Below are positions 16,675-30,401 of a DNA stretch of 64,000 bases, piece after piece. A model generated the notes under the pieces. The model was not told the origin of the DNA. It made no database searches and saw only the letters and a list, made by a program, of their open reading frames with translations. Made by a program: the position numbers and the translations under genes. The DNA is taken from positions 248,001-312,000 of IMG/VR virus record IMGVR_UViG_3300020172_001601. The stretch is one strand, 5' to 3'. How positions within the stretch are numbered: position 1 is the stretch's first letter; each line of letters begins with the position of its first letter.

Positions 16675-17271
16675 CCCAATCCCCTCATGATATTAACACC
16701 AGATGGCATCCTACCAAATCCAGGCAACTTTCCCAGACCAACCCCAGGCTCCGGCAACAAAAGCTCCAAAAACACCCTTTTTTCATGTCGGACGTAAACC
16801 CAATGTGTGAAGGCACTTAGGACACGTTGATGGGAAGTGATGGATTTTAGAGGTAGGAAGGGCCTAGCCAGCCTTTCATTGTGTCCTTTATTCCCCCATA
16901 TCCCCCAGGGAAAAAGTTCCAGAGGCGTATTTGATGAATATTGGAAAGAAAATGTATATCGTTGTGAAGCGATATATGAAAAACAAAAAGAAATGTGTGA
17001 AGGGAAAAGTATCCAAGGGGATCATGATATATTCAGGACCAACTAAGGACACAATAAGGCAACGATATATTTTTCAATATTGAGTTCTAAGGTAACGCTG
17101 CCTTATCTTACCTTTAGTTTTTGTTAGTTGCCCTTGATTGCCTTTTGATTGCCTTCGCTGACTTTGTTGCCTTTTCGTCCTGGATCGCCGCCTTTAGTTG
17201 ACTATTGTTGGCTTTTGGCCATTTAGGTCTATTGTACCCTTGCTTTTAGCCAATGGATGATTGGTGTGCCG

Positions 17272-17308
17272 AAGGGAGCAGTTAGGGGAACCGACTGCTC
17301 CCTTTTTT
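17272..17308 (+). terminator. Intrinsic terminator
   Basis: gggagcagtt...gactgctccc followed by T6. Confidence 0.8.
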
Positions 17309-17535
17309 GTTGCATAACGGGTACAAATGAGGTCAGGTCTATTGTACCCTAGCGGGCTGTTCGTATTTTCGGGTTTGGTTGGAGTCAGCGATGGTCACAT
17401 GCTCATATTGTGGTGGCAAAGGATATGACGTAAAGGACGTGCCGGGGACGAGCAAGCAGTGTCCTGTTTGCAAGGGTTCGGGAGAAGTGAAGCGTTAGGT
17501 CTGGTGTACCCTGGGAGTTGTCGGAAGAAATCGAC

Positions 17536-17565
17536 TTGAACCAAACATGGGTTTGGCTCTCTAGG
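17536..17565 (+). promoter_or_regulatory. Second motif class TTGAACC-N14-CTCTCTNGG (also at 19917, 20581, 24581)
   Basis: Four copies with an identical 14-nt spacing and unrelated spacer sequences. Confidence 0.75.
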
Positions 17566-17583
17566 TGTTTCAGGAGACAATAA

Positions 17584-18681
17584 GTGCTGCAACAAAACCA
17601 ACGCATCTTCTTCGGCCCGAAAGACCCTTGGGGTCATACGGAGCCGAGTGAGGAGCAACGTCGGGAAGCTGTATCCCGGACGAATGTGGCTTCGCCGTTC
17701 GCCAAGTTCATTGGGAACGACAAGGCTATTCGTAAATTGCAAACCGCTGCGTACAAGGCATTGGGTCAGTTCAACCATATGATGCGGGATTTGGCATTTG
17801 CCATTTTTGGCCCGTCATCGGCTGGGAAGACCACCATTGCCCGGTTGTATGCTGAGGTTGTGGAGCTTCCGTTTGTCGAGATCAGCCCGAAGGCGATCAA
17901 GACGGTGGACGATTTGTTCAAGGAAATCAGTCGGGTATTGGCCGAAGCTGGCCTGCCGCTGGTGGAAGTGATTCGTCGTGGTCATTACGTTCTGCCTCCT
18001 GTGGTCATCCTGATTGACGAAGTTCATGCTTTGTCGGATGGGGTTGTGCAGGGGTTGCTGAAGGCAACGGAATACAATGACGCAATGATGGCTACGGAAT
18101 CGGGCAAGACGGTGAACACCCACAATGTAACGTGGATGATTGCCACGACCGATGAAGGGAAGCTATTTGATGCTTTCCGTACTCGGTTCAGCCCGGTGAA
18201 CCTGAAGTATTTGGGCAAGGCCGATGTTGCCAAGATCGTTAAGCTGGCGAACCCAGATTTGAGCGATGATGTGTGCAGCATGGTTGCCCATTACAACAGC
18301 CGTATTCCTCGCAAGGCATTGGAATTCGCCCGGTATATGCGCCTGGTGAAAGATATGTCAGGCGGGACGTGGGAAGAGGTTGCCCGGCAGGTGGCCGAGG
18401 ATGAAGAGATTGACGAGCATGGGATGCACGCCGTCCATCTGAAGATTCTTCGGGCATTGGGTCAGGGGCCGATTGCCCGGAACCGTATTGCATTGGTGGC
18501 TGGGCGTAAGGATGAAGAGGTTGAGAAGTTCATCCTGCCTTGGTTGTTGACTGAGACTGACGATCAGGCCGCTTTGGTGACTGTATCCAGCAAGGGCTAT
18601 ACAATTACTGAGGCTGGGCTTGCTGAGTTGGAACGGCGGGCGATCAACCACAAGGGCGAGAAGGCTCTTGTGGCGGCTTAG
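17584..18681 (+). CDS. ruvB: RuvB-like AAA+ ATPase (Holliday junction branch migration)
   Basis: FIGN, GPSSAGKTT, IDEVH, ATT..G.L...RTRF, PRKA sensor, C-terminal wHTH with GP...E....PWL...KG..IT; order matches RuvB. Confidence 0.85.
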   Translation: MLQQNQRIFFGPKDPWGHTEPSEEQRREAVSRTNVASPFAKFIGNDKAIRKLQTAAYKALGQFNHMMRDLAFAIFGPSSAGKTTIARLYAEVVELPFVEISPKAIKTVDDLFKEISRVLAEAGLPLVEVIRRGHYVLPPVVILIDEVHALSDGVVQGLLKATEYNDAMMATESGKTVNTHNVTWMIATTDEGKLFDAFRTRFSPVNLKYLGKADVAKIVKLANPDLSDDVCSMVAHYNSRIPRKALEFARYMRLVKDMSGGTWEEVARQVAEDEEIDEHGMHAVHLKILRALGQGPIARNRIALVAGRKDEEVEKFILPWLLTETDDQAALVTVSSKGYTITEAGLAELERRAINHKGEKALVAA

Positions 18682-18799
18682 GAAAATATCAACACGCTGC
18701 ATATTGGGCGGTAGTACCTGGGGGACCAGCGAATCATCGGTGTCGAGGCCGACGTGTTGACTTTAGGTCTAGTGTACCCTGGCTGTCGGAGGAACAACA

Positions 18800-19270
18800 A
18801 TGAATACCAGAGTTGAAAAGCTGACGGCCAAGGTTGCTGCGGTGAATCGGGCCAACGAGTATGCGGCACGGTTATATGCTGCACTCGTCGAGAAGTTTGC
18901 CCCATTGGTTGGGCAGAAGATTCTCAAGGTAGATGGCACGCTGCTCGCCAAGTATGAGGGGCTGGTGCCGGTGCTGCCTTGTTCGCCCGATCTGCACGTT
19001 TACCGGCATTCGTCCGACTATTCGTTGGCGTGGACTGTGAAGACCTGCGAGTTCATGCCGCCGCATAGCTGCATGTACCATGAGGTTACGGTTTATGTCG
19101 GCGATCTTCGGGGTGCGACCTTGGAGAAGATGACTGTCCATCCGTTCACGGGTCGCACGGATTATTCTGTGGAAGAGATCACGGCGAAGCGGTTGTCGTA
19201 TGAGTCGGCGAAGCGGGTGGCCGATGAGCTTCGGGGCGAATTGTATCCTTTTGGGGAGGACGACCGATGA
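18800..19270 (+). CDS. Hypothetical cassette protein
   Basis: Motif, then GGAGG RBS. Confidence 0.8.
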   Translation: MNTRVEKLTAKVAAVNRANEYAARLYAALVEKFAPLVGQKILKVDGTLLAKYEGLVPVLPCSPDLHVYRHSSDYSLAWTVKTCEFMPPHSCMYHEVTVYVGDLRGATLEKMTVHPFTGRTDYSVEEITAKRLSYESAKRVADELRGELYPFGEDDR

Positions 19271-19410
19271 AGCGGATCAAGAAGACATATAAGACGCTCA
19301 AGCAGGCCGAGCGTTATCAGAACCGATTGTACAACAAATACAACTCGGTTCAGTTGGTTTCGTTTCCTCGATTCAGTGAGGACGGCGAGTACGTTTGGGA
19401 AGTGGCTTAG
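19267..19410 (+). CDS. Small hypothetical protein (47 aa)
   Basis: GGAGG RBS, ATGA overlap, stop is the motif TAG. Confidence 0.65.
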   Translation: MKRIKKTYKTLKQAERYQNRLYNKYNSVQLVSFPRFSEDGEYVWEVA

Positions 19411-19461
19411 GTCCAGTGTACCCTAGTGGGTGTTCGATTCAAAATCACACAGGAGAGTTCG

Positions 19462-19914
19462 ATGCCTTATGTTCCGAAGCACTTGGAGTTCTTGTCTCAT
19501 TCTGGAACTGCGGACGGCTGGCCCGCTGGGATAACTGAGGTTGGCAAGGAGTTTGCCACCAAGCGGGTTGCTGCTGGCTTGGAGAAGTATGGCCAGTTGA
19601 CGCTGGACACGGCGAAGGGTTGCATTTTCGATCATTACATTGACCGGGAGCCGGTGCCGGAAGAGTTGAAGGGTGTGACGTGGGATTGGTTGTATGGTGT
19701 GACGCATCGGGCGTTGCTGGCGGCATCAGCGCAGCAGGTGTGGGTGGCCGAGAAGTCTTACGTCAAGAAAAAGAAGACGAAGAAGGAATGGCATCCGGTG
19801 GCGGTGAGTCGTGCCGACGTTGAGGCACTGGAGACGGCGGGGACGGTGACGTTGGGTGTGACGGGTGAGCGGGTTCGGGCTTTGGCTGGTGTTCTTGGTC
19901 AACTGGTCAAATAG
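19462..19914 (+). CDS. Hypothetical cassette protein
   Basis: AGGAG RBS. Confidence 0.75.
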   Translation: MPYVPKHLEFLSHSGTADGWPAGITEVGKEFATKRVAAGLEKYGQLTLDTAKGCIFDHYIDREPVPEELKGVTWDWLYGVTHRALLAASAQQVWVAEKSYVKKKKTKKEWHPVAVSRADVEALETAGTVTLGVTGERVRALAGVLGQLVK

Positions 19915-20176
19915 CGTTGAACCAAACAACCTCTCAACTCTCTTGGGTATTGTAAGGGGTTGAGAGTTTACTTCGGATCGGTCAAACAGGGCGGGTGATC
20001 TTCGGACTGCCGCCGAGTTTTGTGAACGAGTAAAACATGCACTGGCCGTAGTTCGTGCGGGAGTGAGTCCCGCTTGGGTCACAGGACCGACCCTAGCAAG
20101 TGGTCCCTGCCAGTAGAACGCCGAACCGGGCAACAACCCATGCAATACACTTCTGGATTTTTTCTCTTCTTTTGTT

Positions 20177-20221
20177 GAAACGTCCGGGAGGCCCAGCACG
20201 TCTGCCTCCCGGACGTTTTTG
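20177..20221 (+). terminator. Intrinsic terminator
   Basis: aaacgtccgggaggc...gcctcccggacgtttt. Confidence 0.85.
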
Positions 20222-20300
20222 TTTGCTCACCAAGGGTACAAATGGGCTGAGGTCTATTGTACCCTAGTCGGCGTCAACGCAACTTTTCAAAGGGAATGAA

Positions 20301-20534
20301 ATGATTCGAGAAGCAAAGTGTATTGGTGTTGAGGGTGACGAAGACGGCGAGTTCAGTGATCTGGTCGGTACTTCGGGCAAGCTGCGGCTTGACGACAAGA
20401 GTACGGACAGTGCCGTGAACTGGTTCAATGGTGGTGGATCGGTCAACTTCACTCGTCGCCGGGTGGCTGAGAAGGATGGCGTGGTGAAGGTATTCACGAA
20501 GTTGGGGAACGTCTTCAAGTTCAGATTGGTTTAG
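20301..20534 (+). CDS. Hypothetical cassette protein
   Basis: Stop is the motif TAG. Confidence 0.7.
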   Translation: MIREAKCIGVEGDEDGEFSDLVGTSGKLRLDDKSTDSAVNWFNGGGSVNFTRRRVAEKDGVVKVFTKLGNVFKFRLV

Positions 20535-20634
20535 GTCCAGTGTACCCTAGCTGGTGTCGGAAAGAAAAAAAGAGATCGCCTTGAACCAAGTGTTTGGTTG
20601 GCTCTCTCGGATAGAACACACAGGAGACTTTACG

Positions 20635-22218
20635 ATGGCTGCGTTTTTGATGATTCAGAACCCCGGTGTTGCTCCCGAAGAGGCTTTCACTCTGTTGGGT
20701 GCTTCAACCAAGCGGGACAGTGAAAACGGTGCGACGATTGGTAAGTTCGGTACGGGGAACAAGCACGGTGTTGCGGTTCTGCTTCGCAACCAGTTGAGTC
20801 CTGTGGTGTTTGCGGGGAATTTGAAGCTGGAGTTCGGGACTCGCCAACAGCCGGTGAATGACGGGATCAAGAATACCGTCTTCAACCGTGTTGTGGTGAA
20901 GTTTGGCGGCAAGGACCGGGCGGGTGTATCACGTTCGGCGACGGAAGACCTTGGCTTCGTTCTGGAGCATGGGTCGGCAGACTGGCTGTCCGTGGATTTG
21001 GCCCTTCGTGAGTTCGTGTCCAACTCTTTGGACCGAGCTATTGAGGAAGGGGAAGTTCAGTTCGTCCATCAGTACATCACGTCCCGGTCCTTGGAGTTTC
21101 AGCAGGCTGCTGCCATCAAGGGATCGTATGAGAATCGGGAGATTGCCGATGCTCTGGCGATCTATCGCAAGACTTCGACGGACTACAAGAACGTCGTGGT
21201 TGAAGTGGTGAATGATGGTCAGGTTCGGGCGAAGGCGGGGCATACTCGCATCTTCATCCCGTTGACTGTGGAAGTGCTGGCCTTCTTCAATGATTTGGGC
21301 AAGTGGTTCCTGCACTTCAGCGAGCCGGAACTGTTGAACAAGACGATTCTGCCGAAGTCGAATCGTAACCTTGGGGATCGTCGGTCGGCTGTGATATATC
21401 GTCGTGGTGTTCGTGTTCGGGAATTCGAGTCATCGGATACGCCGAGCCTGTACGACTACAACTTGGAGAATCTGAAGCTGGACGAATCCCGTCGTGTGGA
21501 CGATTGGTATGTCCAGTATGAAGCGGCGGCGGCTTTTGCTGCTGCTGACGTGGAAACGGTGTCCCGGTTGTGGCAGTCGTTCCTTGACGGTCAGAAGTAT
21601 TGGGAGCATAGCTTCCAGTCCTATGGGCTGGAGACTGGCATCCACAAGGAAGAACAGAAGGCAGTATGGACGAAGGCATTCGAGAGCGTGGCTGGTGAGA
21701 ACGCTGTCGTCTCAACTGAGGAAGGCGGGCAGCAGGCTGCTCGTAAGGGCTTCAAGGTTGTGACTGCACCGCAGGCGTTTGTGCAAGCTGCCGAGAAGCA
21801 TGGGGTTCGCACTCCTGCCAAGGTGTTGTCTGAGGACGAACGGGCTGGCCGGACGATCTTCGATGCAACGCCGGATGCCGAGGCTGCTGTCGAGTTTGCA
21901 TGGTATTTGGTCAACAAGTACGGGGTCACGAATGGCAAGAACAAGCCGGTTGTGAAGACGTTCCGAAAGATCATGGATGCCGGGTCGCAGACGTTGGGGT
22001 TCTACAAGGATGGCGTGGTGTACATCAACCAAGACATTGCAGCGAGTGGTTCGCTGTCTCTTGGGTGGCATTCACTGACTCAGCAATTGCTGGTGACGGC
22101 AATTGAGGAAGTGGCACACCATGTCACGGGAGCTACGGACAACAGCCGGGACTTCCAAGACTTCCTGTTGAATCTGGTGGTCTACATGGCGAAGGAACTG
22201 TCAGGTGTGACGTTCTAA
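20635..22218 (+). CDS. GHKL (HATPase-like) ATPase with C-terminal zincin-like segment
   Basis: GASTK...IGKFGTG and ALREFVSNSLD; C-terminal EEVAHH; AGGAG RBS before ATG 20635. Confidence 0.75.
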   Translation: MAAFLMIQNPGVAPEEAFTLLGASTKRDSENGATIGKFGTGNKHGVAVLLRNQLSPVVFAGNLKLEFGTRQQPVNDGIKNTVFNRVVVKFGGKDRAGVSRSATEDLGFVLEHGSADWLSVDLALREFVSNSLDRAIEEGEVQFVHQYITSRSLEFQQAAAIKGSYENREIADALAIYRKTSTDYKNVVVEVVNDGQVRAKAGHTRIFIPLTVEVLAFFNDLGKWFLHFSEPELLNKTILPKSNRNLGDRRSAVIYRRGVRVREFESSDTPSLYDYNLENLKLDESRRVDDWYVQYEAAAAFAAADVETVSRLWQSFLDGQKYWEHSFQSYGLETGIHKEEQKAVWTKAFESVAGENAVVSTEEGGQQAARKGFKVVTAPQAFVQAAEKHGVRTPAKVLSEDERAGRTIFDATPDAEAAVEFAWYLVNKYGVTNGKNKPVVKTFRKIMDAGSQTLGFYKDGVVYINQDIAASGSLSLGWHSLTQQLLVTAIEEVAHHVTGATDNSRDFQDFLLNLVVYMAKELSGVTF

Positions 22219-22319
22219 CATCAATTGAGCCTGTGTGTGACGGACGGGGGACTGCCAACCCCGTCCGTTTTTTTGTTTATTGCGGTAGGTCTATTGTACC
22301 CTGGGTGGTGGAGGGACAA

Positions 22320-22577
22320 ATGAGAAAACGAATCGTGTTGAATGGTCGGAACGAATACGATGGAAGTCCATCGCATTACTGTTTTGATTTCGATGTCAAG
22401 TTCAATCGGCATGGCAACATTGAAGTGATTGTTGACAAAACGTCATCTTCGTTTGTTTCCTTTTTCCGTGCTGGCAAGTACGTCTTCACTCGGTCGGGCT
22501 TTTGCATTTCGCATCCTGCATCGGAGCGATATCGCTATCACAAGGTCAATGCCGAACTGGTTGAGAGTCACACATAG
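22320..22577 (+). CDS. Hypothetical cassette protein
   Basis: GGAGG RBS; stop is the motif TAG. Confidence 0.7.
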   Translation: MRKRIVLNGRNEYDGSPSHYCFDFDVKFNRHGNIEVIVDKTSSSFVSFFRAGKYVFTRSGFCISHPASERYRYHKVNAELVESHT

Positions 22578-22608
22578 GTACAGTGTACCCTAGTGGGTGG
22601 AGGATAAC

Positions 22609-22812
22609 ATGAAATATGAAAAGTGGATAAGAGATCATCTTTGTGATGTTCATTTTCAGAGCAATGGTTCTACGGGTGGTTGGACTGTTAAGACTTGGGT
22701 TGGCTTTGTGAATGGCTTTATTACAACGGAACATTTTGGTTCTTTGCCGCCTGTGATGGACGAAGTGGTTGAATCTATTCTTAGGAAGGTTGGAAGCAAT
22801 GACGAACGATGA
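22609..22812 (+). CDS. Hypothetical cassette protein
   Basis: GGAGG RBS. Confidence 0.65.
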   Translation: MKYEKWIRDHLCDVHFQSNGSTGGWTVKTWVGFVNGFITTEHFGSLPPVMDEVVESILRKVGSNDER

Positions 22813-23020
22813 ATTTGAAGAGTTGCAGTCTGAAGCTGGCGACTTGGAAGGTCAGTTGGACGAAGCGAAGGATCACTTGAGTAGTGTCACGAGTTGCGAA
22901 ACGCAATCGGACTTCAAGGCGAACCTTACTGAGCTACGGCAAACTCTGACTGTGCTATTGGCTGAAACCACTGATTTGTGGCAGCGTGCTGGTGGTCGTC
23001 CTGTTCGGAAAGCCAAATAG
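22799..23020 (+). CDS. Small coiled-coil protein
   Basis: Stop is the motif TAG. Confidence 0.65.
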   Translation: MTNDEFEELQSEAGDLEGQLDEAKDHLSSVTSCETQSDFKANLTELRQTLTVLLAETTDLWQRAGGRPVRKAK

Positions 23021-23044
23021 GTCCAGTGTACCCTAGAGGGCATC

Positions 23045-23374
23045 ATGCAAAAAACAATTGAAGGACTACAAGCGAAGCTGGACGAGCAGAAGCAACTGCT
23101 TCGCACCCTTGCGATGTGGGGCAAGGTTCAAGAGCAGGGCATCAATCCTGACGATGTTAAGTCGTTCGGGTTTGATCCTGCCTTGATGACTGCCCAAGAA
23201 CGCAACGAGGCACGCCGGGCGAATCGGTTGAACTACACAACCAACAATCCCTATGGCTGGCCGATCAGTCGGAATGAGGAAGGGCAGGCCAGGATTATTG
23301 GACTGAAGCACAACTTCGTCCGGTTGCACTCTGGCGAAAAGGTGAAGTTATCCCCAATGGTGGATCGGCCTTAG
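23045..23374 (+). CDS. Hypothetical cassette protein (near-leaderless)
   Basis: ATG 3 nt after predicted +1; stop is the motif TAG. Confidence 0.75.
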   Translation: MQKTIEGLQAKLDEQKQLLRTLAMWGKVQEQGINPDDVKSFGFDPALMTAQERNEARRANRLNYTTNNPYGWPISRNEEGQARIIGLKHNFVRLHSGEKVKLSPMVDRP

Positions 23375-23425
23375 CTCCAGTGTACCCTAGTGGGTGTTAC
23401 TTCAACAATTCACGGAGACTATGCG

Positions 23426-24040
23426 ATGAAGATTGGTGATACGGTCAAGGTGTTGTCTCGGAAGGCACTTCCTCCGGGGCAGGATGTGTGGCAACGGGGC
23501 AAGGTATTGAGTGTGCGGGACATTGATCCTCCGGTCAGTACCACGGTGTATAACATCGGTTTCGGCGAGTTCTCTTCTTATGAAGAACGGGAATTCGAGC
23601 GTCACGAGATCAAGTCGTATCAGGAACAATCTGATGCCGACTACAACGCCAACATCGAACGGGACATACCGATTGGTCTTGCCTTGGCGAATGAGGCATT
23701 GGCCGAGTTGCTGCCGGGTGAAGTGGTGGTGTTCAAGGATGCCGATGGCGAGTTGTCGGCATACCACGGTGGGGTGACGATCAGTCCAACGCAATACGAT
23801 CAACCGAAGATTGGTGGTTTGATTGAGCGGACGGGGTGGGAAGTCACGACATGGGATGTGCAACCTTCGACCCGGTGGCATCCTGAAGAGTACATTGATT
23901 CGCCTGTTGGGACGTTCCCGACGATTCAACGAGCGGTTCAGGCGTTGATCGAGACGATTTTCAAGTTGAAGGCGAAGGACTATTGGACTGCCAAGGCAGA
24001 TGCAGCGCAGGCCGAGGCATGGGCAGCGGGAGAGATGTAG
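23426..24040 (+). CDS. Hypothetical cassette protein
   Basis: GGAG RBS. Confidence 0.75.
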   Translation: MKIGDTVKVLSRKALPPGQDVWQRGKVLSVRDIDPPVSTTVYNIGFGEFSSYEEREFERHEIKSYQEQSDADYNANIERDIPIGLALANEALAELLPGEVVVFKDADGELSAYHGGVTISPTQYDQPKIGGLIERTGWEVTTWDVQPSTRWHPEEYIDSPVGTFPTIQRAVQALIETIFKLKAKDYWTAKADAAQAEAWAAGEM

Positions 24041-24255
24041 TGAAGAAGTTGACGGTATCGGTTGAGGACGCACAGCGGTTATTGTCCTCAACCGATTTTG
24101 CATATTTGTCAACATGGCATCGGGAGGAATTGGCCAAAGCATTGGCAGACCTTCCTCAACCGCCGCTTGTTGGCATTGGCATAACGGAAGATGATCGCAA
24201 GCTGACGATGTTGGACCATGCTTTCGCCGAGATTGGCAGACGGCGAACAAGGTAG
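24040..24255 (+). CDS. Hypothetical protein
   Basis: TAG/GTG coupling; stop is the motif TAG. Confidence 0.6.
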   Translation: MKKLTVSVEDAQRLLSSTDFAYLSTWHREELAKALADLPQPPLVGIGITEDDRKLTMLDHAFAEIGRRRTR

Positions 24256-24308
24256 GTCCAGTGTACCCTAGTGGGTGTTCCAACAACGAAACCTTTCTGG
24301 AGGATGCG

Positions 24309-24578
24309 ATGGCAGACAAGTTTGTTCAAGTGATTCGTAGTGATGGGGAGCCTGGGCCTTTGTATGGTCCTTACGACTACAACGAGGCCGAGAAGGTATT
24401 GCTTGCAGTATTGCAAAGCAACAAGACGGACAACGGCCCGGTGGAGATCACGGACGAAGTTACTTCTACCATTTCGACGGATGGATGTTGGTCCTTCGAT
24501 GGTGGTGGCGGGGTGTACATTGTCGAGAGTGAAGAGTTCACTCCCGACGAAGAAATTGATGAAGAAATTGACGAGTAG
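24309..24578 (+). CDS. Acidic hypothetical protein
   Basis: GGAGG RBS; D/E-rich tail. Confidence 0.7.
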   Translation: MADKFVQVIRSDGEPGPLYGPYDYNEAEKVLLAVLQSNKTDNGPVEITDEVTSTISTDGCWSFDGGGGVYIVESEEFTPDEEIDEEIDE

Positions 24579-24646
24579 CATTGAACCTAATCGTCAGGTT
24601 GCTCTCTAGGTGTTTGTGAAACCTTCCTTTCTTTGGAGACAGAAGC

Positions 24647-24841
24647 ATGTGGGACTTGGATACCATTGTTCGGATCAATCAGAAGGCTGCGGCTCAGGCC
24701 AGCAAGGGTTTGCCGGAGCGGGACGCCTTGTTCTTGGCGACTCAGACTCGTGACTCCAGCAAGCCGAATCTGAAGGACGAAGGCGAGATCATCAAGCTGC
24801 CTTCGCCGAAGCCGGTGGCTTGTGCATGTTGTGTTGGCTAA
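24647..24841 (+). CDS. Hypothetical protein
   Basis: Follows the TTGAACC-N14 motif; GGAG RBS. Confidence 0.65.
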   Translation: MWDLDTIVRINQKAAAQASKGLPERDALFLATQTRDSSKPNLKDEGEIIKLPSPKPVACACCVG

Positions 24842-24913
24842 CTTCTCCCCGTGGGCGTGGCACGATCTGTGCCACGTCTCACCCTGCGTTATCAACAGGG
24901 GAGAGGAAACAAC

Positions 24914-25306
24914 ATGAGAAGCCGAGAATTGGGAAAGATTGCGGTCGATGCTGGAGACATTGTTTGTTTCAGCATGGACAGCGTGATGCGTTTGGCTGAG
25001 AAGCTGGGCGTGTCTGAGGATACGTTAATCAAGCGATACAACGGTGTGGAATGCGGGTTTGGTGCCGATGGAAACTACGGCGTTGACTCCATGACTGCCG
25101 TTGATGTCGATGGCAAGACGTATTCGGTGGTGATGATTGGTGGTGAACCGGATAAGTTTTTACGCTTTCTTGGCGAGACTGATCCGACGTTCACTTCATT
25201 TTATCACGGTCATCCTCGCTATGCCGAAGTCGGCAAGGGCGAGCAGTTCAACCGGGAACTGTTTGACAGTATTGCAGCGGAGTACCGGGCGAAGTTGCTT
25301 GGATAG
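24914..25306 (+). CDS. Hypothetical protein
   Basis: GAGG RBS; stop is the motif TAG. Confidence 0.7.
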   Translation: MRSRELGKIAVDAGDIVCFSMDSVMRLAEKLGVSEDTLIKRYNGVECGFGADGNYGVDSMTAVDVDGKTYSVVMIGGEPDKFLRFLGETDPTFTSFYHGHPRYAEVGKGEQFNRELFDSIAAEYRAKLLG

Positions 25307-25355
25307 GTCCAGTGTACCCTACGGGGTGTGACACTGATTACACCTTTTACGGAGA

Positions 25356-25736
25356 ATGGACATGAAAGCCGAGTTACCAACGATCAGCAGCTATGGCAAC
25401 TACAGTTCAAGCAACTATGGTGCGCATACCCTGCGGGTTGACCTGGGACCACTGACTGTGTGGTTCAGCTACAAGACGCCAGTTGCCTTCCGAGCGCCGG
25501 GGACGCCGACGATTGTTCGCAAGAACGATTGGGGTGCCACGACGGGCAAGCACCTGAAGTGGATCGACGGTGAGACGAGCAAGACTGCCAAGAACCGGGT
25601 GGACGGTGAGCAGTTCGAGCAGTTGTGGGCGCAGCACGTCGAACCGTTGTTTGAGGATAAGCCCGCACCGGAGCCGGGCATCTTTGCTGGCATCGGCAAT
25701 CTTTTGAATGTGGAACATCCGAAGGACGGCATCTAG
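25356..25736 (+). CDS. Conserved phage hypothetical protein (FSYxTPVA...TTGKH family)
   Basis: Motif pattern recalled from phage early proteins. Confidence 0.7.
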   Translation: MDMKAELPTISSYGNYSSSNYGAHTLRVDLGPLTVWFSYKTPVAFRAPGTPTIVRKNDWGATTGKHLKWIDGETSKTAKNRVDGEQFEQLWAQHVEPLFEDKPAPEPGIFAGIGNLLNVEHPKDGI

Positions 25737-25924
25737 TGGTCGAGGACAAAACAGATTGGTGTGGACGGCACAAGGACAGATTTGGAAAGTCCGTCTACAT
25801 TGATCTGACTCTCAGTCACGATGGAACTTGGTCCTATTTCTATGATGGGAATAGGATCAAGAGTGGCATTCATGGCAAGAAGAATGCGATGGCAGAATTG
25901 CTTGCTTACATAAAGAGCATTTAG
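25736..25924 (+). CDS. Hypothetical protein
   Basis: Coupled start; stop is the motif TAG. Confidence 0.55.
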   Translation: MVEDKTDWCGRHKDRFGKSVYIDLTLSHDGTWSYFYDGNRIKSGIHGKKNAMAELLAYIKSI

Positions 25925-25979
25925 GTCCAGTGTACCCTAGTGGGTGTGACAGCCCACTGGACTTTGCGAGGAAGTGACC

Positions 25980-26411
25980 ATGACTGAACACTATTTGCGT
26001 TTCTTGGAAAACGAAGATGAAGCACAGATGACTGGCTACAAGTTTTCTGTGCAGGGCGACCGGGTGATTATCAGTCAGACGTTCCATCACTCGGAATACG
26101 AGACTGATCGTCCCAAGAACTATTCCAAGCCAGAAGCCCGGAAGTTTTGGGCGAGCCTTATTGCTTCGGGGAAGTTCGAGGAAGTTCGCCCTTCGCTTTC
26201 TCAGGTGTTGGCGAATGCCAAGTCCAATCATGGTTTCTTGACGATGAATGATTTGCGAGTCATCGCCAAGGAAGATCGGCTCAAGATGATTCTGGTCCGA
26301 ATGGGCAACAGCCGATTTTTGGCCCATGCCCAGGATGTGAAGTGGCTGGTTGATATTGTTCAGCGGGACGGCAAGGATTATGTCCGGGACATATCATTGC
26401 CAGCCAAGTAA
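25980..26411 (+). CDS. Hypothetical cassette protein
   Basis: GAGG RBS. Confidence 0.75.
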   Translation: MTEHYLRFLENEDEAQMTGYKFSVQGDRVIISQTFHHSEYETDRPKNYSKPEARKFWASLIASGKFEEVRPSLSQVLANAKSNHGFLTMNDLRVIAKEDRLKMILVRMGNSRFLAHAQDVKWLVDIVQRDGKDYVRDISLPAK

Positions 26412-26521
26412 ACCGTCTTCTTCCGAACGGGCGTCGGAAGCCGTGTTCACCGAGCGGGCGTCGGTGTTTTAGGTCCAGTGTACCCTGGTGGTTGTAACAA
26501 CAACCTTTTGCGAGAGAACAA

Positions 26522-27076
26522 ATGACAAAGCAATACAGAGAACGCTACGGCACGCATTGGGACATTCGCACCCCGCTGGAAGTGATAGCGGTGCTTGAGA
26601 CGGCCCGGCAGAACCGCACTCGACTGCATATCAGCTTGGGTTATACCGAGCATGATGCGGTTGAATGGGAAAACTCATTGGGCGACGAGAAGAAGGCGGT
26701 CGGCCTTGACTGGCTCGAAGAGTATATGAGCTATGGCTACATTGGCCGCAGCACGGGAAGTGTGAAGATACCCCTGTTGGTTCACAATGAGCGGAGCTAT
26801 GGTGGCGGGGCGTTGCTGGACCATTGTATTGTCCGCATTCGCACGAGTCGTGGCGGGCGTGTGCTGTGGCAGCATCCGAACTATCATCACGGCAAGATCA
26901 CGATTCACCGCAAGCCGATCCCTCTGGAATATCCGGGTGGCGTGTTGACGGTGGACGTTCGCCGGAATGGGCAGGAGCAGGCAGCGTTTAAGGACATGGC
27001 ATCGGCCCGGCGTTACGTCAACAAGCTGGGATTGAAGGCCGAGATTGTAAACGCTCTGGAAGCGGCCTTGGCTTAG
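26522..27076 (+). CDS. Conserved phage hypothetical protein (GYIGRSTG..KIPL...GG family)
   Basis: Recognisable motif; stop is the motif TAG. Confidence 0.75.
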   Translation: MTKQYRERYGTHWDIRTPLEVIAVLETARQNRTRLHISLGYTEHDAVEWENSLGDEKKAVGLDWLEEYMSYGYIGRSTGSVKIPLLVHNERSYGGGALLDHCIVRIRTSRGGRVLWQHPNYHHGKITIHRKPIPLEYPGGVLTVDVRRNGQEQAAFKDMASARRYVNKLGLKAEIVNALEAALA

Positions 27077-27127
27077 GTCCAGTGTACCCTAGTGGGTGTA
27101 ACCAACAACAACACACGGAGAGATACG

Positions 27128-27331
27128 ATGGACGCTGATTTCAAAGTTTCGGTTCAAGGCAGCATTTGGTTGTTCGAGCCGGTCACTGAGACTGCGAAGA
27201 ACTTCACCGGCACTGACCTTGACGTTCAGGGTTGGCAGTGGATGGGCAAAGCCTTCGGGGTGGATGCCCGGATTGCCAATGCCTTGGTGAGTTCTCTGGA
27301 AGACGAGGGCTTCGTTTTGGAAATCACATAA
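27128..27331 (+). CDS. Hypothetical cassette protein
   Basis: GGAG RBS. Confidence 0.7.
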   Translation: MDADFKVSVQGSIWLFEPVTETAKNFTGTDLDVQGWQWMGKAFGVDARIANALVSSLEDEGFVLEIT

Positions 27332-27355
27332 GGGGATCGCTTCCTCTTGTGTGGC

Positions 27356-27502
27356 ACGGCGGTACTTTAATGGCAGAAGGCGGCTCCAAGCAAGGTTCGA
27401 GTCCTTCTTAGGCTGGAGTTCTGGAGAGTTAGCTACTCTTTGGACCTCCCCCTTTGCATGGAGTACGGGGCGGCAGTGCGGGTTCGACTCCCGCTCGCTG
27501 TG
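27356..27502 (+). ncRNA. tRNA-like RNA with expanded anticodon domain
   Basis: Acceptor ACGGCGG/TCGCTGT, D-arm CTTT-AATGGCA-GAAG, T-arm GCGGG-TTCGACT-CCCGC; ~95-nt structured middle region. Confidence 0.7.
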
Positions 27503-27561
27503 TTTTTAGGTCTGGTGTACCCTAGTGGGTGTTACGAAACTTTCCTTTTGGAGAACGAACT

Positions 27562-28056
27562 ATGTTGAAGGAAGCCTGTCGCAAGGGCATGAAGGTTTAC
27601 TTCGGTCGGTCGAATGGCGAGAAGACCTTGGGTGAGGTTGTGAAGCTGAATCCGACGAAGGCCAAAGTGCGAACCCTGGAACAACGGGGCAATGGTCGTG
27701 GGTCGGCTATTGGCACGGAATGGGGCGTTCCCTATTCGATGCTGACGCCAGCCGAAGGTGAAACGGTGGGCATTGTTGTTCCGATTCAACGGGAGCATCT
27801 GACCTACAACCCGTTCACCTACATCGAGAATCTGATTCTCGAAGCCATCCTGTCCTGTTACAGCGGCCTGTCGCCGGAGAACCTGTCGGCTGATGGTGAG
27901 GCGAGCATCACGCATATTCGGACGACTCGTGCCAGACTGGAACGGCAGCTTCGGGGACTGCAAGCGGCCTATGGTCGGCAGGTAGACGAAGCCGAAGTGT
28001 ACGGTTGGGCAGGCAGCAAGTCGGCCTACGAACTGGCCCGCAAAAAGCAGGCATAA
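27562..28056 (+). CDS. Hypothetical cassette protein (SH3/KOW-like N-terminus)
   Basis: GGAG RBS; followed by a terminator at 28074-28105. Confidence 0.75.
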   Translation: MLKEACRKGMKVYFGRSNGEKTLGEVVKLNPTKAKVRTLEQRGNGRGSAIGTEWGVPYSMLTPAEGETVGIVVPIQREHLTYNPFTYIENLILEAILSCYSGLSPENLSADGEASITHIRTTRARLERQLRGLQAAYGRQVDEAEVYGWAGSKSAYELARKKQA

Positions 28057-28155
28057 GTTTGTGAAGGGCAGCGAAAGGCAGGGGTATATCCCCTGCCTTT
28101 TTTTGTGTCCATATTGTTTAGGTCTATTGTACCCTAGAGGGTGGAGGATAAGAAA

Positions 28156-28365
28156 ATGAAAAAGAATCCAACTGCGAGTGAACTGGTTGATCGACGAAAC
28201 TTGAACAATTACAAGCGATGGCTTCGAGGGCAATCTGCCCGTCTCGAAGGCAAGCCATGTGCTGAGAATCATGGGGTTTATTTGGACGGGTTTTATTCAC
28301 CCGATGCAATCATCCCGGATTTCTTGACTCACGACGAAGCGGCCCGGCTGCGAAGGCAGATGTAG
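28156..28365 (+). CDS. Hypothetical cassette protein
   Basis: Stop is the motif TAG. Confidence 0.7.
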   Translation: MKKNPTASELVDRRNLNNYKRWLRGQSARLEGKPCAENHGVYLDGFYSPDAIIPDFLTHDEAARLRRQM

Positions 28366-28408
28366 GTCCAGTGTACCCTAGTGGGTGTCACCTAACGGGA
28401 GAAGTCGA

Positions 28409-28579
28409 ATGTGGTATGTGATCCAAGATGACGATGGACCATTCCTGACGAATGAAACGCCTGCGGAAACAGATGTGATTCTGTTCCAAGGCACTATTGT
28501 CGAGGCCGAACGAGCCTTGCAGCGTGCTTGTGAAGATTGGGAATCCGAACACGACGACATGAACGAGGACTTTCAATGA
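28409..28579 (+). CDS. Small acidic protein
   Basis: GGAG RBS. Confidence 0.6.
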   Translation: MWYVIQDDDGPFLTNETPAETDVILFQGTIVEAERALQRACEDWESEHDDMNEDFQ

Positions 28580-28983
28580 TTTTTGTAAGCGTCACAAAGA
28601 ATGACGGCCAAGCCGTTGTTTCGATCAACGCTGCTCAGGAAAGGAAGTATTTTCCTTTGACGAAGCGGGGTTGTATTGCTGCGGGTAAGTGGCTGGCTGA
28701 GATCGGAGCGGATAGTTGGAGCAATAGTTCCAGCGTTGACTTCCCGAAAGAAGTCAAGCCTCGCTTCCGGCACAATGTTTCAGACCTGATGACTGAGGGC
28801 TTTCGGTCGGTGCCGCCTGTGGTCCAAGAGACTGTGGTTGGCGACTACGAAATTCGTGGCAATCAATACGTTGCGATTGCCATCAACGTCAAGAACCCGA
28901 AGGACTCTCATTACTTCGACCCCGATGTGAACAACAACGCCTTTATTCGAGCCTGTGGTTGGGCTTATGAACCGGAGGACTAA
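28576..28983 (+). CDS. Hypothetical protein
   Basis: GAGG RBS; ATGA overlap. Confidence 0.7.
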   Translation: MIFVSVTKNDGQAVVSINAAQERKYFPLTKRGCIAAGKWLAEIGADSWSNSSSVDFPKEVKPRFRHNVSDLMTEGFRSVPPVVQETVVGDYEIRGNQYVAIAINVKNPKDSHYFDPDVNNNAFIRACGWAYEPED

Positions 28984-29235
28984 ATGTCTTTTCCAAAAGA
29001 CGGGACAGTGTTAAATGGGGCATTCTGGCTAAATGGGGAATCATGGCTAATCATGGAACCCCAAAAGCCACTGAATGAATATCTTGCACAATCATTGCAG
29101 GAGCAGCGGCAATACATTGAACGCCTGACCAAAAGGGCAGACGCACTGGAACAATGGCTGGCTAGGTCCAGTGTACCCTCAAGGGCAAGGAGAACAAAAC
29201 ATGGCAAGTCCTTGGAACGTGGTGGAACTGGTTGA
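28984..29235 (+). CDS. Hypothetical protein reading through the motif (RSSVP)
   Basis: GGAGG RBS. Confidence 0.55.
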   Translation: MSFPKDGTVLNGAFWLNGESWLIMEPQKPLNEYLAQSLQEQRQYIERLTKRADALEQWLARSSVPSRARRTKHGKSLERGGTG

Positions 29236-29638
29236 GAAGCCGAAAGGCAGTGTTGGCATGAGTCTGGCTGAGGCCGACAAGTTGCTGCGAACTGCGGGAT
29301 ATTTGCAAGGTGATTGGGACTATTTGAAGGACTATCACTTTGCGAAGTACGTTTACTTCGACATCAACACAGTGGAAGACGTGGAAGCCTTCCTTGTGAA
29401 GCTGGACAAGGACAACGAAGACCATACGAAACCTGGGCCATTCCGATGGGGCTGCTCGAAGGCGAAGGGCATTCGGTCCTATTTGAAGAATGAAACATGG
29501 AAGAAGGACGAAACTTGGCTAAGGGCAGCAATATCCCACAATCGTCGCATCATTTGTTCCTGCCATGAGGGTGGGTCATATAAGCGACGGGATGAACTGC
29601 CGATTGGTCATCAAGAGAGGCCGTGGGGGATGAAGTAG
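29201..29638 (+). CDS. Hypothetical cassette protein
   Basis: AGGAG RBS; stop is the motif TAG. Confidence 0.75.
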   Translation: MASPWNVVELVEKPKGSVGMSLAEADKLLRTAGYLQGDWDYLKDYHFAKYVYFDINTVEDVEAFLVKLDKDNEDHTKPGPFRWGCSKAKGIRSYLKNETWKKDETWLRAAISHNRRIICSCHEGGSYKRRDELPIGHQERPWGMK

Positions 29639-29690
29639 GTCCAGTGTACCCTAGCTGGTGTTGAGAGAACGAACTCGAACTGGAGAAATC

Positions 29691-30401
29691 ATGAAAGAAC
29701 TCGAAGCTGCGTTGAACGAAGAGTTGGCGAAGGTGCTGGGTGCAAAGCACAACTGGATGGGCGTGATTGCCGGGGTTGCCGGTCGCCGAGCCAGTGAGTT
29801 TGCCCGGACGAAGAACGGTTTGCTGGAAGACGTTGTGACCGACGTGACTGGCGACATCATTCTTCAGGCGAAGGAAGGCAAGCTGGCGGGTGCGGTGATT
29901 CGTGCCAAGGAAGCATCCCATACGGATGAAGAACTGGTGGAGAACTTACGGCACGTCGTCATGAAGGCGGCGTTCTACCGGGTGAGTGATGCCATGAAGT
30001 GGCGCTATCGCAGCGGCACTCAGTTCAGCCAGATCAGTGCTGAGAATGACTTCTCCGAGACTGTGGAAGCTCGCCCGGAAACCGAAACCGACTTGACCTA
30101 TTACACGGACCTGTTGGTGAATGAGTTGGAAGTGATGGCGACTGCTGCCGACTGGAAGCACAATCGCACCGGGAACCCCAGCTATCCGAAGCAGGCGAAG
30201 CGGTTACGGAAGTCCAAGGAAATGGTGCCGGATCGGGTCGAGGGGATGGCGTTGAAGGATTTGATGGAGAAGTACAGCGTCGGCAGCAAGGGCGGGATGC
30301 AACAGCATCTTGACGACATTGGGCAGGCACTTGCCCGTGTTGCCGGTCGGCTGGGTGATCCTACCTTGGTTCGAGGGACCAAGGGGATCGAGGTTGCTTA
30401 G
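29691..30401 (+). CDS. Divergent ECF-type sigma factor-like protein
   Basis: Region-2-like EDVVTDV...LRHVVMKAAFYRVSDAMKWRYR; region-4-like EGMALKDLMEKYSVGSKGGMQQHL; 236 aa. Confidence 0.5.
   Translation: MKELEAALNEELAKVLGAKHNWMGVIAGVAGRRASEFARTKNGLLEDVVTDVTGDIILQAKEGKLAGAVIRAKEASHTDEELVENLRHVVMKAAFYRVSDAMKWRYRSGTQFSQISAENDFSETVEARPETETDLTYYTDLLVNELEVMATAADWKHNRTGNPSYPKQAKRLRKSKEMVPDRVEGMALKDLMEKYSVGSKGGMQQHLDDIGQALARVAGRLGDPTLVRGTKGIEVA

What the first reader, a model, noticed from the sequence alone, without database searches (positions are those of the whole stretch)
17536..30401. Second promoter class TTGAACC-N14-CTCTCT and a candidate cognate ECF-like sigma inside the array
Seen: four copies with an exact 14-nt spacer (17536, 19917, 20581, 24581). 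They precede ruvB, a structured non-coding region, the GHKL ATPase and ORF 24647. Two lie just downstream of a main motif, giving dual control. Established: GAAC-type -35 and TC-rich -10 elements typify ECF sigma promoters. Seen and inferred: ORF 29691-30401 has sigma region-2-like and region-4-like segments. A small cascade is possible: main motif, then phage sigma, then a second wave including both ATPases. A host ECF sigma is the alternative.
Basis: partly seen in the sequence, partly recalled or inferred. Interest (0 to 1): 0.7.

Follow-up and report, generated by a model that had tools for sequence, protein, structure and literature searches.

The report
Phage-specific promoter class in a huge phage
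The repeated TTGAACC-N14-CTCTCT sequence is real and belongs to a set of 24 promoter-like sites across an uncultivated 340-kb freshwater phage that carries several sigma factor genes, but the sigma-like gene proposed as its reader more likely serves the other, main repeat of the gene array.

Summary
Observation confirmed. There are four exact copies at the stated coordinates, against none expected. They belong to 24 strong sites in the 340-kb phage record. All 24 lie on the + strand, between genes, with consensus aTCG-N3-TGAACY-N14-CTCTCT-W-GG. They sit 8-60 nt upstream of Shine-Dalgarno (ribosome-binding) sites and start codons. They also precede tRNA genes, including an amber-suppressor tRNA, and a ~270-nt non-coding unit. 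Three relatives keep the two boxes at orthologous sites while the spacer diverges. This fits a phage-specific, non-sigma70 promoter class, but no transcription start site (TSS) data exist.

The genome also holds 39 consensus sigma70-type promoters and four Pfam-detectable sigma genes outside the window. No RNA polymerase (RNAP) gene was found.

ORF 29691-30401 has no Pfam hit. Its high-confidence model is a two-domain helical protein whose best matches are ECF sigma factors, with middling scores. Its region-4-like helix lacks basic residues. In 8 of 9 contexts read, the family sits in small-ORF arrays whose repeat has an xTGTA core, like the AATGTA promoters of phiEco32 sigma gp36. It therefore more likely reads the main array motif than class 2. 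The cognate sigma of class 2 is unresolved; sigma2 and sigma4 are the leading candidates.

The parts
17531..17565 (+). Class-2 site 1: TCG-N3-TGAACC-N14-CTCTCT-AGG. It lies 21 nt after a main-motif copy and 21 nt before the GTG start of the AAA+ gene.
   Evidence: PWM score 45.4, the best in the genome. An orthologous site is kept in G002 and L055.
19912..19946 (+). Class-2 site 2. The TAG stop of ORF 19426-19914 supplies the conserved G upstream of TGAACC. It precedes the non-coding unit.
   Evidence: score 36.7
20576..20610 (+). Class-2 site 3, 30 nt after main-motif copy 20534-20550 and 27 nt before the ATG of the 527-aa gene.
   Evidence: score 40.0. The orthologous site in G002 keeps CGAACC-N14-CTCTCTAGG with a diverged spacer, and L055 also keeps it.
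24576..24610 (+). Class-2 site 4, directly after the TAG stop of ORF 24261-24578 and 39 nt before the ATG at 24647.
   Evidence: score 40.2. Orthologous sites occur in G002 (7269) and L055 (4299).
17496..17514 (+). Main array motif copy (TAGGTCTGGTGTACCCTGG) just upstream of class-2 site 1.
20532..20550 (+). Main array motif copy (TAGGTCCAGTGTACCCTAG) just upstream of class-2 site 3. The same tandem arrangement occurs in G002.
17584..18681 (+). AAA+ ATPase (365 aa), clamp-loader/RuvB_N-like, downstream of site 1.
19944..20225 (+). Non-coding unit of about 270-280 nt, running from site 2 to an intrinsic terminator (hairpin about 20178-20220 plus a T run). No ORF, no Rfam family.
   Evidence: (MFE z -2.86)
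20635..22218 (+). 527-aa protein downstream of site 3. GHKL/MPN635_N-like by language-model features only.
24647..24841 (+). 64-aa ORF downstream of site 4, function unknown.
29691..30401 (+). Divergent sigma-like protein (236 aa), single copy in the genome, preceded by main-motif copy 29638-29654. Domain 1-106 is sigma2-like and domain 132-229 is sigma4-like.

Best explanation
TTGAACC-N14-CTCTCT is the core of a ~35-nt bipartite promoter, aTCG-N3-TGAACY-N14-CTCTCT-W-GG. This promoter is used genome-wide by an uncultivated, tRNA-rich huge phage.

The phage shows no RNA polymerase gene in the 340 kb held, so it most likely redirects host core RNAP with its own sigma factors. About 39 consensus sigma70-type promoters (TTTACA-N17-tGGTAKAAT) would be read first by the host holoenzyme. 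One of them drives sigma2.

A phage sigma would then read the 24 class-2 sites. The best candidates are sigma2, which is small with a basic region-4 helix, and sigma4, which itself sits behind a class-2 site. The class-2 sites switch on:
- translation and replication-type functions (tRNA cluster, amber-suppressor tRNA, PTH2, ThiF-like, ParB-like, AAA+ ATPase);
- sigma4;
- a small non-coding RNA;
- the first 7 kb of the small-ORF array.

ORF 29691-30401 is probably a further, very divergent sigma-like factor. Its likely target is the array's main repeat (yAkTGTACCC), not class 2.

Shown: the motif's statistics, placement and conservation; the sigma gene inventory; the fold resemblance.
Inferred: promoter activity, temporal order, and every sigma-promoter pairing.
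For: Motif statistics:
- 4 exact copies in the window against 0 expected, and 11 exact copies in the genome.
- 24 PWM hits scoring 27-45, separated from the next-best scores of 18 and 21. None on the minus strand and none in shuffles.
- The spacing is invariant in 22 of 24 sites while the spacer sequence is free.

Placement:
- Sites lie between genes, mostly 8-60 nt before a Shine-Dalgarno site and start codon.
- One site ends 12 nt before tRNA-CUA, and one precedes the tRNA cluster.
- One site heads a terminator-bounded non-coding unit, so the motif is not a translation signal.
- Some sites follow terminator T-runs directly.

Conservation:
- Orthologous sites in G002 (75-83% nt identity), L055 and the 602-kb contig L058 keep GAACC and CTCTCT while the spacers diverge.

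Transcription machinery:
- Sigma70_r2/r4 genes lie at genome positions 48.0, 62.4, 155.9 and 197.1 kb.
- There were no Rpb1/Rpb2 hits. The single-subunit RNAP (PF00940) search is not informative, because its controls did not match anywhere either.
- 39 sigma70-type consensus promoters occur on the + strand against 1 on the minus strand. One lies 73 nt before sigma2.
- A class-2 site lies directly upstream of sigma4.
Against: - There is no transcript 5' end for any site, and no RNA run was listed.
- CTCTCT matches no characterised -10 element that I know of.
- About 10 of the 24 sites can pair GAACC with GGTTC inside the motif, so a protein operator or a hairpin is not excluded.
- No sigma could be tied to the motif by co-occurrence. 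21 huge-phage records with sigma1 homologues (30-49% identity) lack the motif. Relatives with sigma2 at about 55% identity lack it at the ThiF site.
- None of sigma1 to sigma4 is a clear ECF by sequence. Sigma1 is FliA/WhiG-like, and sigma2 has only a weak Sigma70_ECF match.
- The record is only about 69% complete.
Confidence: 0.6

Rival explanations
1. One reading: ORF 29691-30401 is the ECF-like sigma that reads TTGAACC-N14-CTCTCT. It would be expressed from the main motif and would switch on a second wave.
For: - The ORF is sigma-like by fold. Its top structural hits in PDB and in Swiss-Prot AFDB are ECF and other sigma factors, covering both domains in the correct order.
- hhalign aligns its C-terminus to the region-4 HTH of the sigma1 family (probability 40%, pairwise E 3e-4).
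- The predicted complex with E. coli beta' 250-330 gave 'weak support': score 0.49 against a best control of 0.00. The mark was reached by 58 of 80 solved complexes and 2 of 110 mismatched pairs, but at 0.60 or under by only 7 of those 80 and by both mismatches. The runs agree in at least 22% of contacts, and the partner's pLDDT is at least 60.
- Class 2 and the ORF co-occur in G000, G001, G002 and L055.
Against: - Only 4 of the 24 sites are in the array.
- The helix aligned to the sigma4 recognition helix reads MQQHLDDIGQAL and has no Arg or Lys. This fits poorly with reading a -35 box.
- The family co-occurs with xTGTA-core repeats in 8 of 9 contexts read. These include L054, with no class-2 site in 20 kb, and L056, L061 and L063.
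- No Pfam sigma domain was found in any of 57 family members.
- Four canonical sigma genes are available as alternatives.
Confidence: 0.12
2. A host alternative sigma, ECF-type, reads the class-2 sites.
For: The GAAC box and the roughly 17-nt distance to TCT resemble ECF promoters of the RpoE type, GGAACTT-N16-TCTRA (from my own knowledge). No phage sigma could be assigned.
Against: - The phage carries 4-5 sigma genes of its own but shows only three motif classes, and one of those is sigma70-type.
- The motif is conserved over about 35 nt, far beyond typical ECF boxes.
- All four copies in relative G002 and three in L058 carry CGAACC where G000 has TGAACC. A concerted change of this kind suits a co-evolving phage factor, though a different host would also explain it.
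- The regulon (tRNAs, replication-type genes) looks like a core phage programme, not a stress add-on.
Confidence: 0.12
3. The motif is not a promoter. It would be an operator for a phage DNA-binding regulator, or an RNA-level element for processing or attenuation, placed in 5' regions.
For: - Partial inverted repeats (GAACC...GGTTC) occur in about 10 of 24 sites. The mean MFE is -1.9 against -1.2 kcal/mol for shuffles.
- Two sites sit next to sigma70-type promoters (171001/171044 and 181937/181973). Two sit next to main-motif copies. An operator would be placed in this way.
Against: - The pairing is absent in more than half of the sites and is not kept in register.
- The two conserved boxes are asymmetric and lie at a promoter-like distance from each other.
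- Many sites are the only candidate signal between a terminator and the next gene.
Confidence: 0.12

Closest known systems
Phage-encoded sigma factors with phage-specific promoters: phiEco32 gp36 (AATGTA element centred at -11.5) and phage 7-11 gp47 (GTAAtg-N16-aCTA) (PMC12276001, PMC8948821)
   Same: - Host sigma70 promoters drive early genes.
- A divergent phage sigma then redirects host core RNAP to a short phage-wide consensus found upstream of later genes.
- The 7-11 consensus is bipartite with fixed spacing, like class 2.
- The gp36 element shares its xTGTA core with the array's main motif and with the TAATGTACCC repeats of L061 and L063.
   Different: - The consensus sequence differs.
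- The genome is 340+ kb, with four to five sigma-like genes and three motif classes.
- Nothing has been tested experimentally.
- There is no detectable sequence similarity to solved sigma chains.
Sigma cascades of Bacillus phage SPO1 (gp28, then gp33/34) and T4 gp55 late transcription (own knowledge; SPO1 in PMC13401047)
   Same: Successive phage sigmas each have their own promoter consensus. Here, a sigma gene (sigma4) lies behind the promoter class of the preceding stage.
   Different: - The order of stages is inferred here from promoter placement only.
- T4 gp55 lacks a sigma4 domain, whereas the proteins here keep a C-terminal HTH-like domain.
ECF (group 4) sigma promoters, for example the RpoE type GGAACTT-N16-TCTRA (own knowledge)
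   Same: A GAAC-containing upstream box, a pyrimidine-rich downstream box containing TCT, and rigid spacing.
   Different: - Extra conserved positions: TCG upstream and WGG downstream.
- No ECF-typical CGT.
- No adjacent autoregulated ECF/anti-sigma pair.
- None of the phage sigmas is a clear ECF by sequence.
PeSL promoter/stem-loop cassettes between small ORFs in hyperplastic regions of T4-type phages (PMC2839356, PMC4122927)
   Same: This is context for the array. A repeated regulatory motif sits in front of nearly every small ORF of a variable region, and a variant follows terminators.
   Different: PeSLs carry sigma70-type early promoters. The main motif here is not sigma70-like and travels with its own sigma-like gene.

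Membership tests
Bacterial-type bipartite promoter (sigma-dependent) | Two conserved boxes at a fixed distance, with a non-conserved spacer | tested here: met
   22 of 24 sites have identical spacing and 2 differ by 1 nt. Information content is concentrated in TGAACY and CTCTCT-W-GG.
Bacterial-type bipartite promoter (sigma-dependent) | Located upstream of, and co-oriented with, transcription units, including non-coding ones | tested here: met
   All 24 sites are on the + strand and between genes. They precede a Shine-Dalgarno site and start codon, tRNA genes, or a terminator-bounded non-coding unit.
Bacterial-type bipartite promoter (sigma-dependent) | Transcripts start 5-10 nt downstream of the -10 box | not testable with these tools
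   No RNA run was listed for this phage.
ECF-sigma promoter | A -35 box with a GGAAC/GAAC core | tested here: met
   TGAAC is invariant in G000. Relatives carry CGAAC.
ECF-sigma promoter | A -10 box of CGT/GTC type | tested here: not met
   The box is CTCTCT-W-GG, with no CGT. It resembles only the RpoE TCT core (own knowledge).
ECF-sigma promoter | The cognate ECF sigma gene is autoregulated from the same motif | tested here: not met
   There is no class-2 site directly upstream of sigma1, sigma2 or ORF 29691. Only the 341-aa sigma4, which is not ECF-sized, has one.
Sigma-70 family protein (ORF 29691-30401) | Sequence match to Sigma70_r2 and r4 profiles | tested here: not met
   - No Pfam family at E up to 10.
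- 0 of 57 family members match a sigma domain.
- No PHROG hit.
- No sigma chain among the PDB sequence hits.
Sigma-70 family protein (ORF 29691-30401) | A sigma2 plus sigma4 two-domain fold in the correct order | tested here: inconclusive
   - The model has pLDDT 91.
- The best hit in both PDB searches is ECF SigL, 6dv9_F (VIA Z 6.6, 162 residues aligned; Foldseek E 0.27).
- About 20 of the top 50 VIA hits are sigma domains, but all Z scores are below 8, which the tool rates as middling for helical proteins.
- About 20 of the top 30 Swiss-Prot AFDB hits are sigma factors, with E 0.25-1.
- hhalign to the sigma1 family covers the sigma4 HTH only (probability 40%).
Sigma-70 family protein (ORF 29691-30401) | Binds the RNAP beta' clamp helices | tested here: inconclusive
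   Complex prediction gave weak support: 0.49 against a best control of 0.00. The mark was reached by 58 of 80 solved complexes and 2 of 110 mismatches, but a pass at 0.60 or under is weak. Runs agree in at least 22% of contacts, and the partner's pLDDT is at least 60. E. coli beta' was used because the host is unknown.
Sigma-70 family protein (ORF 29691-30401) | A basic recognition helix in region 4.2 for -35 contact | tested here: not met
   The aligned helix is GGMQQHLDDIGQAL in the ORF and TMQAILDDIGQAL in the family consensus, with no Arg or Lys. Sigma1 to sigma4 have R/K-rich helices.
phiEco32 gp36-type sigma with a single-element AATGTA promoter | The sigma gene accompanies many copies of a single xTGTA-core element placed shortly upstream of genes | tested here: met
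   This holds in 8 of 9 genomic contexts of the ORF family:
- G000, G001, G002, L054 and L055 carry TGTACCCT.
- L061 and L063 carry TAATGTACCCT.
- L056 carries CCATGTAAGT.
- L062, the most distant member, carries none.
Sources. The consensus is from PMC12276001. That the ORF recognises the element is not tested.

The most novel reading that the evidence does not exclude
ORF 29691-30401 would found an undescribed, Pfam-invisible sigma-like family of 64 clusters at 50% identity. Each member would be the dedicated initiation factor of a hyper-variable array of small phage ORFs. It would read a single-element, gp36-like promoter (xTGTAcc core) that is repeated in front of almost every ORF and co-varies with the protein across lineages. 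Class-2 promoters at the 5' end of the array, read by another phage sigma, would prime the array. The huge phage would then run a cascade of at least four tiers of sigma factors that also switches on an amber-suppressor tRNA.
Probability: 0.3. Interest if true: 0.7.

Novelty: new member of a known kind. Interest (0 to 1): 0.5.

Why it matters
Huge phages are known to encode sigma factors, but their promoter classes and regulatory order are almost unknown because the phages are uncultivated. This genome offers three sharply defined motif classes and five candidate specificity factors. The pairings can therefore be tested directly in vitro or in a heterologous reporter. One class drives an amber-suppressor tRNA. 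One divergent sigma-like family appears tied to per-gene promoters of accessory-gene arrays. Orthogonal sigma/promoter pairs of this kind are also useful parts for synthetic biology.

Tried and rejected
- RNA evidence: no RNA run was listed for the region, so no TSS mapping was possible. Read laying was not used, because only DNA runs were offered.
- Rfam: no family was found in the window at gathering scores, and only chance-level hits at 19900-20300.
- blastn of 17200-24600 against deposited phages found no match.
- Co-occurrence tests for the cognate sigma were uninformative. 21 IMG/VR huge-phage records with sigma1 homologues have no class-2 sites. Sigma2 and sigma4 have no relatives in viral contigs. 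Metagenome contigs could not be searched whole.
- Hairpin hypothesis for class 2: only weak, inconsistent pairing was found, so it was not adopted.
- Recoding hypothesis prompted by the two tRNA-CUA genes: TAG is an ordinary stop and coding density under code 11 is about 0.9. No alternative code was used.
The PF00940 search is not informative, since its controls did not match.
- Window hit 32450 (genome 280450, PWM score 21) was rejected as a class-2 site. It overlaps a GGAACCCGC/GCGGGTTC terminator-like hairpin.

Full report
**Context.** The window is bases 248001-312000 of a single 340,341-bp IMG/VR virus record. The record is linear, CheckV estimates it at 69% complete, and its GC is 47.8%. 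Near-identical DNA occurs in freshwater and sediment metagenomes. The record carries 52 tRNA genes and has no match among deposited phages.

**Observation.** TTGAACC-N14-CTCTCT occurs four times, at exactly the stated positions, against zero in shuffles. Aligning genome-wide relatives gives a longer consensus: aTCG-N3-TGAACY-waa-N8-tt.g-CTCTCT-W-GG, followed by a loose T/G-rich stretch.

A two-block PWM allowing ±1 nt of spacing finds 24 sites scoring 27-45, between genome positions 57.6 and 272.6 kb. The next-best scores are 21 and 18. There are no hits on the minus strand and none in shuffled genomes. The array therefore holds only 4 of 24 sites.

**Placement.** All sites lie between ORFs. 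In most, the distance from CTCTCT to a start codon preceded by a Shine-Dalgarno (ribosome-binding) site is 8-60 nt. Several follow terminator T-runs directly.
- One site (genome 181973) ends 12 nt before a tRNA with anticodon CUA.
- One site (72622) heads the large tRNA cluster.
- The window site at 19917 heads a ~270-nt unit with no ORF. It ends in a strong intrinsic terminator, has an MFE z-score of -2.86 and matches no Rfam family.

The motif is therefore not a translation signal.

Downstream proteins include a ThiF-like enzyme, PTH2, a ParB_N-like protein, DUF6011, the AAA+ ATPase at 17584-18681, the 527-aa protein at 20635-22218 and sigma4. No structural genes were seen among them.

**Conservation.**
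- The IMG/VR fragment G002 is syntenic with window 17.6-25.5 kb at 75-83% nt identity. It carries the motif upstream of the orthologues of the AAA+ gene, the 527-aa gene and the 64-aa ORF. GAACC and CTCTCTWGG are kept while the spacers diverge. All four G002 copies read CGAACC where G000 reads TGAACC.
- L055, a JGI contig whose ORF 29691 homologue is 71% identical, keeps two of these sites.
- L058, a 602-kb contig with sigma2 at 72% identity, keeps three sites, including those before ThiF and before the orthologue of the gene at 58494.
- More distant relatives with sigma2 at about 55% identity lack the motif at the ThiF site.
- 21 huge-phage records with sigma1 homologues lack it altogether.

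**Other transcription signals and factors.** The genome has 39 copies of TTTACA-N17-(tG)GTAKAAT on the + strand and 1 on the minus strand. This is a textbook sigma70-type promoter with an extended -10, and it is conserved in relatives of 37-53% GC.

Four ORFs match sigma profiles:

| Name | Start (genome) | Length | Evidence |
|---|---|---|---|
| sigma1 | 48022 | 180 aa | r2 + r4; FliA/WhiG-like by PDB phmmer |
| sigma2 | 62411 | 220 aa | r2, weak r4 and weak Sigma70_ECF; 73 nt after a consensus sigma70-type promoter |
| sigma3 | 155954 | 315 aa | r2 + r4 |
| sigma4 | 197120 | 341 aa | weak r2; sigma-like by atlas features; directly behind a class-2 site, within a run of six such sites at 194-199 kb |

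No multisubunit RNAP domain was found. The single-subunit search had no working control. The simplest reading is host core RNAP reprogrammed by phage sigmas, as in SPO1, T4, phiEco32 and 7-11 (PMC8948821, PMC12276001, PMC13401047).

**The candidate sigma, ORF 29691-30401.**
- It has no Pfam or PHROG hit.
- Its family has 28 close homologues and 64 cluster representatives. None of 57 members scanned matches a sigma domain.
- Profile searches against PDB sequences find no sigma.
- With the 57-sequence alignment, AlphaFold2 gives a confident model (pLDDT 91): two helical domains, 1-106 and 132-229, joined by a disordered linker.
- The top hit in both PDB searches is the ECF sigma SigL in a holoenzyme, 6dv9_F. 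VIA-align gives Z 6.6 with 162 of 174 residues aligned, and Foldseek gives E 0.27.
- About 20 of the top 50 VIA hits are sigma2 or sigma4 domains, or whole sigmas. They include CnrH, SigR region 4, SigD4, E. coli sigmaE region 4 on -35 DNA, SigB, T4 gp55 and chain F of the phiEco32 gp36 holoenzyme entry 9M7Y (an earlier, poorer model gave similar results).
- About 20 of the top 30 Swiss-Prot AFDB hits are sigma factors.
- All these scores are middling for helical proteins, so the fold evidence is suggestive, not decisive.
- hhalign against a sigma1-family profile aligns only the region-4 HTH (probability 40%, pairwise E 3e-4).
- A predicted complex with E. coli beta' residues 250-330 gave 'weak support': 0.49 against a best control of 0.00. 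The mark was reached by 58 of 80 solved complexes and 2 of 110 mismatches, but at 0.60 or under by only 7 of the 80 and by both mismatches. The runs agree in at least 22% of contacts, and the partner's pLDDT is at least 60.

I put the chance that it is an RNAP-binding sigma-like factor at roughly 0.6.

**Which motif does it serve?** Two observations argue against class 2.

First, the helix that aligns with the sigma4 recognition helix is GGMQQHLDDIGQAL (family consensus TMQAILDDIGQAL). It has no Arg or Lys, whereas sigma1 to sigma4 have R/K-rich helices. A bipartite promoter with an invariant -35 box needs a DNA-reading sigma4.

Second, the family travels with arrays of small ORFs that carry a repeated single element with an xTGTA core:
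- TGTACCCT in G000, G001 (20 copies), G002 (25 copies), L055 (36 per 20 kb) and L054 (36 per 20 kb, GC 37%, protein 48% identical);
- GTAATGTACCCT in L061 and L063;
- TAGTACCATGTAAGTTGT in L056.

Only the most distant member read (L062, profile E 2e-7) sits elsewhere, among T4-like tail genes.

phiEco32 gp36 lacks homology with sigma region 4. It reads a single AATGTA element centred at -11.5 (PMC8948821, PMC12276001). By analogy, transcripts from the main motif would start near the GGGTGT that follows it. This last step is inference.

The ORF is single-copy in the genome and is itself preceded by a main-motif copy.

**Mechanism proposed (inferred).**
1. Host sigma70 holoenzyme reads the 39 consensus promoters, one of which drives sigma2.
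2. A phage sigma reads class 2. Sigma2 or sigma4 are the best guesses, and the choice is unresolved.
3. Class 2 turns on tRNAs, the suppressor tRNA, replication and translation helpers, sigma4, a small RNA and the 5' end of the array.
4. The array's sigma-like ORF then amplifies expression from the main motif.

**Rivals.** About 10 of 24 sites show partial GAACC/GGTTC pairing, which is weak and inconsistent. Each rival is given roughly 0.12.

**Novelty.** This is a new promoter consensus and sigma set of a known kind, the phage sigma cascade. The Pfam-invisible sigma-like family coupled to per-gene array promoters is the more novel lead.

Noticed in passing
outside the window: G000 182011-182084 and 182708-182778: There are two tRNA genes with anticodon CUA (amber suppressors). 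The first lies 12 nt after a class-2 site, which is itself preceded by a sigma70-type promoter. TAG is still a normal stop (95 of 444 crude genes). It is enriched in the array and nearly absent at 300-340 kb (2 TAG against 27 TAA)..
   Followed up: partly
window 17226-45148: The main motif is really TAG-GTCYAKTGTACCC-N4-GGGTGTAAC. The TAG is the stop codon of the upstream ORF. ACCC-N4-GGGT can form a hairpin. A TATTGT variant follows intrinsic terminators, while the CAGTGT variant abuts ORF ends. The core TGTACCCT is kept in relatives from 37% to 53% GC..
   Followed up: partly
outside the window: G000 11-254 kb; also window 2005 and 5617: 39 copies of a textbook sigma70-type promoter, TTTACA-N17-(tG)GTAKAAT, lie on the + strand. 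Variants occur on the minus strand near 300-312 kb. The consensus is conserved in relatives L058-L060..
   Followed up: partly
window 19944-20225: A structured non-coding transcription unit of about 270 nt lies between a class-2 site and a strong terminator. It matches no Rfam family and is absent from relative G002, which has a tRNA-like sequence nearby instead..
   Followed up: partly
L052 (G002) 3337-3494 and 3610-3770: In the relative, the main motif, the class-2 site and the 5' end of the 527-aa gene are duplicated in tandem, about 273 nt apart.
   Followed up: no
G002 and L058 class-2 sites: All copies in these relatives read CGAACC where G000 reads TGAACC. This is a concerted change across sites.
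   Followed up: no
window 17390-17499: A tiny ORF with two CxxC pairs (zinc-ribbon-like, about 35 aa) ends in the TAG of a main-motif copy, just upstream of class-2 site 1.
   Followed up: no
window 58298-59914 (-): A 538-aa ORF on the minus strand matches PolyA_pol / tRNA nucleotidyltransferase head domain (1.5e-20). This fits the phage's large tRNA set.
   Followed up: no
outside the window: G000 62.4-67.5 kb; L058-L060: Sigma2 sits in a conserved block: NAD-dependent DNA ligase, sigma2, Prok-E2_D, (JAB), ThiF. This is a ubiquitin-like conjugation set.
   Followed up: no
L062 7905-8681: The most distant member of the ORF 29691 family that was read lies among T4-like neck, sheath and tube genes, next to a weak Sigma70_r2 ORF, and not in an array.
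   Followed up: no
sequencing runs X7-X14: Eight runs labelled with a single organism ('organism A', about 280 Mb each) hold 28-29% of the sampled words of window 17200-22300. A related phage may be present in a culture, which could reveal the host.
   Followed up: no
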